Shown here: piece after piece, positions 53,872 to 55,916 of the stretch
Layout: every line of letters starts with the position of its first letter
Position numbering within the stretch: the stretch's first letter is position 1
Assembly (NCBI GenBank): GCA_033442325.1
Contig: JAWQFM010000018.1
Span: 636,617-700,616, forward strand
Direction of reading: 5' to 3'
Origin: Salpingoeca rosetta
Taxonomy: Eukaryota > Protista > Choanoflagellata
Length of the DNA: 64,000 nt
Notes under the pieces: model-generated
The model's database searches: none
The model's input: the letters and a program-made list of their open reading frames with translations, nothing else
Told to the model about the DNA's origin: nothing
Program-made: the position numbers and the translations under genes

Positions 53872-55125
53872 GTGTGTGTTGTGGCGTGTTGCATTGTGCT
53901 GTGTGTATGTATGTCGTGCGTGTGCGCTTTTTCGACTGTGTGCTCTCGCTTGCATCCTTCCGCTTGTTGAATGGCCGCCTTTGGGAATGCGTTGTTGAGT
54001 TGGTGACTTGCACCCCTTCCTCCTTTCACCACGACCCCACCACGACACAATGCCTCCCCCTCCTCCCAACTTCAACAACAGGGCTACGGCATTTTGAAGG
54101 AGATTCTTGACATTCTCAACGGCACGCGGACGGTCCTGGACGAGAAGCACAAGTCGACGCTGCTGTTGGACGCGACCAACCGCTTCTACACCGCAATCCC
54201 TCACCAGTTCCCCACATTCCGCGCCCCGCCCGTCATCAGGTGCGAAGGGGAGAGACAAGGGAGGGGGAAATTGTTGGTTTGGAGCTTTGCGACGTGGAGA
54301 GATGCTCTCTCGACTGTCACTCACGGAAATGCCACACACACAATAATACACAAAATACACACATACACAACATACATACACACAAACACACACTTACACA
54401 CACACATACACACACATACACACACATGCGCATACATACACACATATACACACATACACACACATGCGCACGTGTACCCTTGTTGTGTGCCAGCACGATG
54501 GAGATGCTGAAGCGGAAGTTGGACCTGATGGAGCAGCTGCTTGAGATCCAGCACGCCAACAAGCTCATCAAGGAGGGCGAGGAAGAGGTGGGCGTGAACC
54601 GCGTGGACGCAAACTACTCGAAGCTCAAGTGCGATTTGCAGCCGGTGGACCAGTCGTCCGATGAAATGGAGATGTTGCGCAAGTACGTGCGCAACACGCA
54701 CGCCAAGACGCACAGCCAGTACAAGCTGGAGGTGGAGTCCGCCTTCAAGGTGAAGAAGGAGGGCGAGGAGGACAAGTACAAGCCGTTTGCCGAGTACGAC
54801 AACCGCCGCCTTCTCTGGCACGGTTCTCGCCTTACCAACTGGGTCGGCATCCTCTCCCAAGGTGCGCGCGATGATGGGATGCGTTGACGTTGTGTGTGTC
54901 TGTGTCTGTCTGTGTCTGTATGTGTGTGTGTATGTGTTTGTGATGTTGAGTTGTGGAAGTGAATTGCGCTTCAATGTTTGTCGCTCTCCGATGCTCCCTG
55001 TCTCTACGCATTTGCACCTCATCCACTTTTTCATATCACTTCATGTCATTTCATGGTTAGGCCTTCGCATCGCTCCTCCAGAGGCCCCCGTCACGGGTTA
55101 CGTGCGTACATATGCTCGCTTCTTC

Positions 55126-55198
<73 letters not shown>

Positions 55199-55601
55199 TT
55201 TGCATTTGTGTGAGTGTGTTGGCGTGTTGACACTCGTATGTATGCCCATTTCCATGCTCACGTGCTGCTTTGTCTGTGGGTGTGTGTGGGTGTGATTGCT
55301 CCGTGTGCGACTTTCTTTGCCGCATCGACGCCCGCGCCGCCATGCACAACAGAGTACGTTTTGCACTCCACCCAAAGCTGCTGCAATGCCGCGTTGCATC
55401 ACATGCGTTGCTGCCCTGCATCATCGTGGTCGTTGTTTTCTTCTCAATCATCGCACCTACTCACGATGACGACTTTCACACACACACACACACATACACA
55501 CACACATTCGCACTTCTCCACGTCTGCAGTGTTTGGCAAAGGTGAGCCGTTATGTTTCACGTGTTTTGCTGCCGATGATGTTTCTTTTTCCAGCATAACC
55601 G

Positions 55602-55646
<45 letters not shown>

Positions 55647-55916
55647 GCACCGCAAGCCATTGCTCCTCGCACAATCACCGCCACAACCATACCAACCTTA
55701 CCAACAACAACCACGACCACGACGACTGCGATGATGATCAGGCGTGTACTTTGCGTCCATGGTATCCAAGAGCGCCAACTACTGCTTCCCGAGCCGCAGC
55801 GACTCAACAGGCGTTCTCCTCCTCTGCGAAGTCGCTCTTGGCGACATGTACGAGAGGTGAGTTGACCCCGTCATCTTTGTTTTGCTGGTGTATTTGCATG
55901 CATGTGTGTATGCGCG

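What the first reader, a model, noticed from the sequence alone, without database searches (positions are those of the whole stretch)
55090..55760. Apparent single-nucleotide exon in the PARP active-site signature
Seen: one exon ends ...GTC ACG GGT TAC|gtgcgt (55101, phase 0), but the next visible exon cag|TG TTT GGC AAA G|gtgag (55530-55541, only 12 nt) needs one extra base. Between them lies caacag|A|gtacgt (A = 55353): an acceptor and a donor typical of this genome separated by one base. Using it gives APVTGY-M-FGKGVYFA, the conserved PARP motif, and splits a 428-nt interval into two normal introns (251 and 176 nt), each with its own CA tract. Direct alternatives damage the motif (donor 55106 gives GYVLFGKG; donor 55097 gives VTVFGKG). 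One-nt exons are very rare, are missed by gene finders and aligners, and imply ordered, intron-defined splicing; skipping would frameshift the catalytic domain.
Basis: partly seen in the sequence, partly recalled or inferred. Interest (0 to 1): 0.85.

Follow-up and report, generated by a model that had tools for sequence, protein, structure and literature searches.

The report
One-base exon in a PARP gene
A single A (55353), with a normal intron on each side, most likely supplies the first base of an essential methionine codon in a PARP1-like gene; the same layout occurs in a second gene copy and in a related species, but I saw no RNA reads.

Summary
Exon B (55061-55101) ends GGT TAC|gtgcgt. 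The 12-base exon C (55530-55541) starts TG TTT. One base is missing for the GYMFGKG motif. Base A55353 sits in cag|A|gtacgt.

- The orthologue in a marine relative (79% aa identity) has acacag|A|gtacgttttgca in the same interval. This is the only conserved island found in three introns compared.
- A paralogue on another contig of this genome (68% identity) has ccccccag|A|gtaagt between the same 41-base and 12-base exons.
- In all three genes the A splits an over-long interval into two introns of ordinary size and restores GYMFGKG.
- Met fills this position in 146 of 152 homologues; Val never does.
- Every single-intron alternative differs between the genes and breaks the motif.
- The stretch around the A (55197-55477) is held in full by DNA-like runs of 7 studies.

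Nuclear one-base exons are published for Arabidopsis APC11 and Fusarium CYP621A. This would be a third case, probably the first in a choanoflagellate. The scan's first readers flagged the same kind of site elsewhere in this genome, including another PARP note.

Confidence 0.88.

The parts
54494..54861 (+). Exon A: end of the PARP regulatory domain and start of the catalytic domain (…[17 protein letters not shown], plus the first base of a Gly codon)
   Evidence: Pfam PF02877 and PF00644; tblastn to homologues; spliced translation
55061..55101 (+). Exon B, 41 nt, encoding (G)[13 protein letters not shown] and ending in phase 0 before donor gtgcgt
   Evidence: The orthologue and the paralogue have an exon of the same 41-nt size.
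55102..55352 (+). Intron 1 of the pair, 251 nt, gtgcgt…caacag, with a long CA tract
   Evidence: Matrix scores: donor 6.8, acceptor 4.9, within or above the range of the other introns of the gene.
55319..55368 (+). Conserved intronic island around the A. Seventeen bases, ACAGAGTACGTTTTGCA, are identical in the orthologue.
   Evidence: Local alignment score 40 against 18.9 ± 2.4 (maximum 31) for shuffles. The two neighbouring introns show nothing above shuffles. The 17-mer occurs once in the 55-Mb genome. No Rfam family matches.
55353..55353 (+). Proposed one-base exon, A: first base of the Met codon of GYMFGKG
   Evidence: cag|A|gtacgt. It is the only AG-A-GT in the interval, as in the orthologue and the paralogue. 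It restores the frame and the motif.
55354..55529 (+). Intron 2 of the pair, 176 nt, gtacgt…ctgcag, with its own CA tract
   Evidence: donor score 6.3, acceptor 1.8
55530..55541 (+). Exon C, 12 nt, TGTTTGGCAAAG: the last two bases of Met, then Phe-Gly-Lys and the first base of Gly
   Evidence: A 12-nt exon sits at the same place in the orthologue (identical letters) and in the paralogue (TGTTTGGAAAAG).
55742..55856 (+). Exon D, 115 nt, (G)[14 protein letters not shown]…GDMYE(R)
   Evidence: Pfam PF00644

Best explanation
A55353 is a constitutive one-base exon of a PARP1-like gene. The pre-mRNA carries two ordinary GT-AG introns, of 251 and 176 nt, separated by this single A. Removing both joins …GGT TAC + A + TG TTT GGC AAA G…, which creates the ATG of the active-site loop GYMFGKG and keeps the catalytic domain in frame. 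U1 pairing at the donor (positions -3 to +6, AGA|GTACGT) covers the AG of the acceptor. The two sites therefore cannot be occupied together, and the introns must be removed one after the other. If intron 1 goes first, it leaves a 42-nt exon ending ACA|gtacgt. If intron 2 goes first, it leaves a 13-nt exon behind caacag|. Shown here: the sequence layout, its recurrence in three genes, and the conservation of the sites. Inferred: that the mRNA really contains the A, and that removal is sequential. The layout is older than the duplication that produced the two paralogues of this genome.
For: - Frame and motif: only inclusion of one A gives an open frame through the whole catalytic domain, with GYMFGKG, the WHGS histidine, the GVYFA tyrosine and the YDEF glutamate.
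- Orthologue: contigs L011-L015, from several marine metagenome assemblies, are 79% identical in protein and 66% identical at fourfold sites. They carry a 41-nt exon ending GGC TAC|gtgagc, then acacag|A|gtacgttttgca, then the 12-nt exon, with introns of 140 and 164 nt.
- Conserved island: it is the only significant intron conservation among three introns compared. Three population variants in the interval all fall outside the 17-nt core.
- Paralogue: the copy at G000:C33 is 68% identical in protein. It has the same exons and ccccccag|A|gtaagt, with introns of 229 and 243 nt. Its flanks differ from the window's, so what is kept is the acceptor-A-donor core.
- Uniqueness: each of the three intervals holds exactly one AG-A-GT.
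- Residue: Met fills this position in 146 of 152 homologues and Val in none. Three other PARP paralogues of this genome spell ATG, either contiguously or across a single intron.
- Intron size: a single intron of 428 nt (305 and 473 nt in the other two genes) would be about twice the size of its neighbours, which are 188-300 nt here.
- Genomic sequence: 55197-55477 is held at 100% of sampled words by 20 DNA-like runs from 7 studies.
- Precedent: one-base exons are proven in Arabidopsis APC11, where a 422-nt 'intron' holds the A, and in Fusarium CYP621A.
Against:
- No transcript-derived protein of this organism or of its relative turned up.
- A scan for the relative's spliced mRNA in JGI metagenome contigs found nothing.
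- The splice-site matrix rests on only 10 introns. Some sites score low: the acceptor before the A scores 1.3 in the relative, and the acceptor of exon C scores 1.8 here.
- Within one gene the chance expectation is about 0.01-0.04, which is not negligible.
- One-base exons are very rare, so the prior is low.
Confidence: 0.88

Rival explanations
1. There is a single intron using another canonical donor near exon B (55106 or 55097) and the acceptor at 55529. The protein then carries GYVLFGKG or VTVFGKG instead of GYMFGKG.
For: Both donors begin with GT and keep the frame. Their matrix scores (2.4 and 1.9) lie within the range of real donors scored by leave-one-out, 0.9-6.7.
Against: The equivalent alternatives in the orthologue and the paralogue lie at other offsets and give other peptides (for example GYVSTLFGKG and GYVRWSLFGKG), so nothing is conserved. 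All of them destroy a position that is Met in 146 of 152 homologues. They leave the conserved AG-A-GT island unexplained. They also require an intron about twice the usual size.
Confidence: 0.05
2. There is one 428-nt intron with a boundary shifted by one base and a non-canonical end (TAC G|tg…cag|TG, or TAC|gt…gca|GTG). The protein reads GYVFGKG.
For: Every GT donor starts with G, so this reading is formally possible in all three genes and keeps the frame.
Against: It needs a TG donor or a CA acceptor right beside a perfectly good GT or AG; the matrix score of the shifted donor is -8.7. Val is never seen at this position. It does not explain the conserved acceptor-A-donor in three genes.
Confidence: 0.03
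3. The frame is not restored by splicing at all. Either the gene is decaying, or the missing base comes from an assembly error, RNA editing or ribosomal frameshifting. The island would then be some other intronic element.
For: No RNA was seen here. Conserved intronic islands can be small RNAs or regulatory sites.
Against: All downstream exons stay open and conserved in the corrected frame in three genes. The same missing base occurs in independent assemblies of another species and in a paralogue. The stretch around the A (55197-55477) is reproduced in runs of 7 studies. No Rfam family matches the island, which is unique in the genome. The paralogue keeps only the splice-site core, not the flanking sequence.
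Confidence: 0.03

Closest known systems
Single-nucleotide exon of Arabidopsis thaliana APC11 (Guo & Liu 2015, PMC4674806)
   Same: A lone A lies between a canonical AG acceptor and a GT donor inside what had been annotated as one intron (422 nt there, 428 nt here). It is needed for the frame and was missed by annotation.
   Different: That case is in a plant and was proven by cDNA sequencing and by mutating the A in GFP constructs. The rice APC11 genes have no intron, so it is not known to be conserved. The present case is inferred from comparison only, but it is kept in an orthologue and in a paralogue, and it lies in a catalytic motif.
One-nucleotide exon of Fusarium CYP621A P450 genes (Nelson & Syed 2026, PMC12940212)
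   Same: The argument has the same shape: an intron about twice the usual length, an aligned AG-N-GT in all orthologues, the base falling in a codon of a conserved motif, and intron-free relatives as a ruler.
   Different: That case is fungal, and the base is the middle one of a Gly codon. It is supported by 18 SRA reads; the paper calls it the second example known. Here the base is the first of a Met codon, the neighbouring exon is only 12 nt, and no reads were seen.
Recursive splice sites (zero-length exons, AG|GT) of long animal introns, from my own knowledge of the Drosophila Ubx literature, not checked here
   Same: An acceptor and a donor lie next to each other and must be used one after the other. 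The first splice regenerates a donor.
   Different: Recursive sites leave no base in the mRNA and serve very long introns. Here one base stays and both introns are short.
Placozoan mitochondrial cox1 one-base-pair micro exon (PMC5436844, title and abstract only)
   Same: An exon of one base pair in an essential, conserved gene.
   Different: It is mitochondrial and, as mitochondrial introns are not spliceosomal (my own knowledge), works by a different mechanism.

Membership tests
Spliceosomal one-nucleotide exon | A canonical 3' splice site ends immediately before the base | tested here: met
   caacag|A in the window, acacag|A in the orthologue, ccccccag|A in the paralogue. Matrix scores are 4.9, 1.3 and 3.5, against -1.6 to 5.9 for the other acceptors.
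Spliceosomal one-nucleotide exon | A canonical 5' splice site starts immediately after the base | tested here: met
   A|gtacgt in the window and the orthologue, A|gtaagt in the paralogue. Scores are 6.3, 6.3 and 5.5, at the top of the range of the other donors, 0.9-6.7.
Spliceosomal one-nucleotide exon | The base is needed for the reading frame and gives the expected conserved residue | tested here: met
   There is an open frame through the catalytic domain only with the A. Met is present in 146 of 152 homologues.
Spliceosomal one-nucleotide exon | The arrangement is kept in related genes | tested here: met
   Orthologue L011-L015 and paralogue at G000:C33.
Spliceosomal one-nucleotide exon | The mature mRNA contains the base between the flanking exons | not testable with these tools
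No transcript-derived protein or contig was found.
PARP1/2-type poly(ADP-ribose) polymerase | PARP regulatory and catalytic domains with the His-Tyr-Glu triad | tested here: met
   PF02877 and PF00644 are hit above their cut-offs. LLWHGS, GKGVYFA and LLYDEFIV are present in the spliced translation. The assignment of triad residues to these motifs is from my knowledge of human PARP1.
PARP1/2-type poly(ADP-ribose) polymerase | N-terminal PARP1 architecture (zinc fingers, BRCT, WGR) | tested here: inconclusive
   There are weak tblastn matches to the PADR/zinc region, the BRCT linker and WGR of a 910-aa Diphylleia PARP1 between 50067 and 53308. No full gene model was built.

The most novel reading that the evidence does not exclude
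One-base exons are not a lone oddity here but a recurring, ancient and tolerated feature of this lineage, which other agents of the scan take for the choanoflagellate Salpingoeca rosetta. The PARP case predates a gene duplication and a speciation. First-stage notes on other parts of the same genome propose further ones, in dynein AAA1 (even two in a row), in a GH38 mannosidase and in a dermatopontin-sushi gene. If this holds, the organism would be a natural system for studying how a spliceosome handles overlapping acceptor and donor sites. Its gene annotations would also be wrong at such sites in a systematic way.
Probability: 0.35. Interest if true: 0.8.

Novelty: new member of a known kind. 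Interest (0 to 1): 0.66.

Why it matters
- Only two nuclear one-base exons are in the searched literature, in a plant and in a fungal genus. This would be a third, probably the first in a choanoflagellate.
- It would be the first shown to survive both a gene duplication and a speciation.
- It lies in the catalytic loop of a DNA-repair enzyme, so skipping it would frameshift the catalytic domain.
- Gene finders and read aligners cannot place a one-base exon, least of all beside a 12-base one. Models of these two PARP genes are therefore likely to be wrong, which I did not check.
- The conserved 17-base core offers a defined target for testing what makes such a site work.

Tried and rejected
No reads were seen.
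Only residues 126-250 (bases 54486-54860, outside those places) were drawn on and scored. I sent no other search containing those letters. Local scripts read the whole window.
- Protein searches for transcript-derived proteins of this organism or its relative: 142-451 aa, full length through a mixed alignment (swamped by candidates, only the Diphylleia query returned), and 67-212 aa. Only the relative's genomic ORF, P0001, came back.
- Scan of JGI metagenome contigs for the relative's spliced mRNA with N at the key base: no match.
- Scan for more related loci: 599 pattern matches, none confirmed.
- Processed copy of the spliced form in the genome: none.
- The island as a repeat or a known RNA: unique in the genome, no Rfam match.
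- Naming the top homologues to place the organism: they are scattered across eukaryotes (Diphylleia, Selaginella, insects, a chytrid, an oyster) and give no placement.
- The splice-site matrix with exon-side positions, trained on 10 sites, overfitted and was replaced by an intron-side matrix with leave-one-out scoring.
- Second run search: all 20 listed holders of the intron stretch look like DNA.

Full report
**What is there.** The window is nuclear DNA of an intron-rich eukaryote. Its genome has 55.4 Mb in 68 contigs, and the window is G000:C18:636617-700616. Follow-up agents of this scan call the organism Salpingoeca rosetta. I did not test that.

From about 50000 to 56750 on the + strand lies a PARP1-like gene. 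Pfam finds the PARP regulatory and catalytic domains in its exons. tblastn with a 910-aa Diphylleia PARP1 traces exons along the whole stretch.
- Exon B (55061-55101, 41 nt) ends GGT TAC|gtgcgt in phase 0.
- Exon C (55530-55541, 12 nt) reads TG TTT GGC AAA G|gtgagc.
- Exon D starts at 55742.
- One base is therefore missing.
- Base 55353 is an A inside caacag|A|gtacgt.

Joining the exons with that A gives one open frame from the regulatory domain to the stop. It contains [25 protein letters not shown] and LLYDEFIV.

**Is it more than chance?** Within this gene alone, only modestly. I built a small intron-side splice matrix from the ten other introns of this gene and of its orthologue. With it, the donor after the A scores 6.3 and the acceptor before it 4.9. 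The other sites, scored by leave-one-out, range from 0.9 to 6.7 for donors and from -1.6 to 5.9 for acceptors. The combined site ranks 12th of 383 AG-N-GT sites on both strands of the window, which is about 0.04 expected per 428 nt. Most higher-ranking sites sit in GT repeats.

**The orthologue.** The best database match to exon A is a 187-aa ORF, P0001, from marine metagenome assemblies, among them two TARA samples. Its contigs L011-L015 carry genomic DNA of an orthologue. It is 79% identical in protein to the window gene and 66% identical at fourfold-degenerate sites. The layout is the same:
- a 41-nt exon ending GGC TAC|gtgagc;
- 140 nt of intron;
- acacag|A|gtacgttttgca;
- 164 nt of intron;
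- the identical 12-nt exon, then exon D.

I compared three introns between the two species. The two neighbours show nothing above shuffled controls. The interval holding the A has one island, window 55319-55368 against L011 1148-1203. Its score is 40 against 18.9 ± 2.4 for shuffles (maximum 31), and its core is 17 identical bases centred on AG-A-GT. Three variants among the relative's contigs fall in this interval, and all lie outside the core. The 17-mer occurs once in the 55-Mb genome. The stretch matches no Rfam family.

**The paralogue.** Scanning the genome for PF00644 and reading the hits shows a second PARP1-like gene on contig C33, minus strand. It has:
- the same 41-nt exon B (…GGA TAT|gtacgc);
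- the same 12-nt exon C (TGTTTGGAAAAG|gtgagg);
- between them, ccccccag|A|gtaagt, at about C33:274018;
- introns of 229 and 243 nt.

This copy is 68% identical to the window gene and 69% to the marine orthologue. It therefore split off before the two species did. The simplest reading is that the one-base exon is older than the duplication. The sequence around the A differs from that of the window gene. What all three genes share is acceptor, A and donor. That points to splice sites, not to some other sequence-specific element.

**Alternatives.**
- Each of the three intervals holds exactly one AG-A-GT.
- In-frame single-intron alternatives with GT or GC donors exist in each gene. They lie at different offsets and give different peptides: VTVFGKG and GYVLFGKG here, GYVSTLFGKG in the orthologue, GYVRWSLFGKG in the paralogue. 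All of them break the motif.
- A one-base shift to a TG donor or a CA acceptor would give GYVFGKG. The shifted donor scores -8.7.
- Among 152 homologues covering the motif, the residue is Met in 146, Arg in 4, Asp or Glu in 2, and never Val.
- Other PARP paralogues of this genome spell TAC ATG TTT without a break (C17) or across one phase-2 intron, AT|gtgagc…tag|G (C9).
- An assembly error is unlikely. The same missing base is seen in another species and in a paralogue. In addition, 55197-55477 is held in full by 20 DNA-like runs of 7 studies.
- A single intron would be 428, 305 or 473 nt in the three genes, about twice the size of its neighbours (188-300, 106-161 and 221-284 nt).

**Mechanism (inferred).** U1 pairing at the donor spans AGA|GTACGT and so covers the acceptor's AG. 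The two sites cannot be bound at once, and the introns must go one after the other. Either order leaves an ordinary small exon of 42 or 13 nt. This resembles recursive splicing, except that one base stays behind. Skipping the A would frameshift the catalytic domain.

**What I could not do.** I saw no RNA.
- I worked beside those places afterwards, with one slip. The reference spanned them, although only residues outside them were searched.
- Three protein searches and two metagenome scans gave no transcript-derived sequence.
- In one search, runs with 0.18-0.37 of the words of a 4-kb stretch fit the exonic share, which I estimate at about a third. That suggests spliced mRNA, but the tool only guesses that these runs are RNA.

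**Comparison with the known.** The full-text searches found nuclear one-base exons reported for Arabidopsis APC11 and for Fusarium CYP621A.
- In APC11 a lone A lies in a 422-nt 'intron', and it was proven by mutation.
- In CYP621A the evidence is comparative plus 18 SRA reads, and the paper calls it the second example.
- I found nothing for choanoflagellates.

This is thus a new member of a known but very rare kind. It is notable for its persistence through a duplication and a speciation, and for lying next to a 12-nt exon in a catalytic loop. First-stage notes of this scan propose further one-base exons in the same genome, including one on 'another piece' in a PARP gene that may be the C33 copy. 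None of those had been followed up, and I did not test them.

**Verdict.** Confidence is 0.88, pending RNA reads.

Noticed in passing
G000:C33 about 273,300-275,000, minus strand (loci L002/L009): A second PARP1-like gene of the same genome has the same 41-nt exon, a one-base exon A (ccccccag|A|gtaagt, at about C33:274018) and the 12-nt exon. It may be the locus of the scan's note s1-432392.
   Followed up: yes
G000:C9 (locus L007, reverse strand); L019:1250-1475; L016:735-797: The same Met codon is a hot spot for introns. The C9 paralogue and an unrelated metagenome eukaryote (L019) have one phase-2 intron (AT|gtgagc…ag|G). Another eukaryote (L016) has a phase-0 intron right after ATG. Together with the two positions in this gene, that makes four intron positions within 3 bases.
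   Followed up: partly
L011:1592-1697: In the marine orthologue, the intron after exon D starts GCACGT (a GC-AG intron). The window gene has GTGAGT at the same position (55857).
   Followed up: no
window 56460-56570: The last intron of the PARP gene holds a long tandem repeat of TTGTTTG-like 7-base units. Most other introns of the gene carry CA or GT dinucleotide tracts.
   Followed up: no
window 35708 onward and up to 60098: The window contains 300 N, either masked or gaps. The first is at 35708 and the last at 60098. I did not look at what flanks them.
   Followed up: no
other pieces of the same genome (notes s1-433340, s1-434339, s1-435882, s1-435308, s1-433370, s1-436003): First readers propose further one-base exons, in dynein AAA1 (two in a row), in the GH38 active site and in a dermatopontin-sushi gene. 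None of these notes shows a follow-up in the listings.
   Followed up: no
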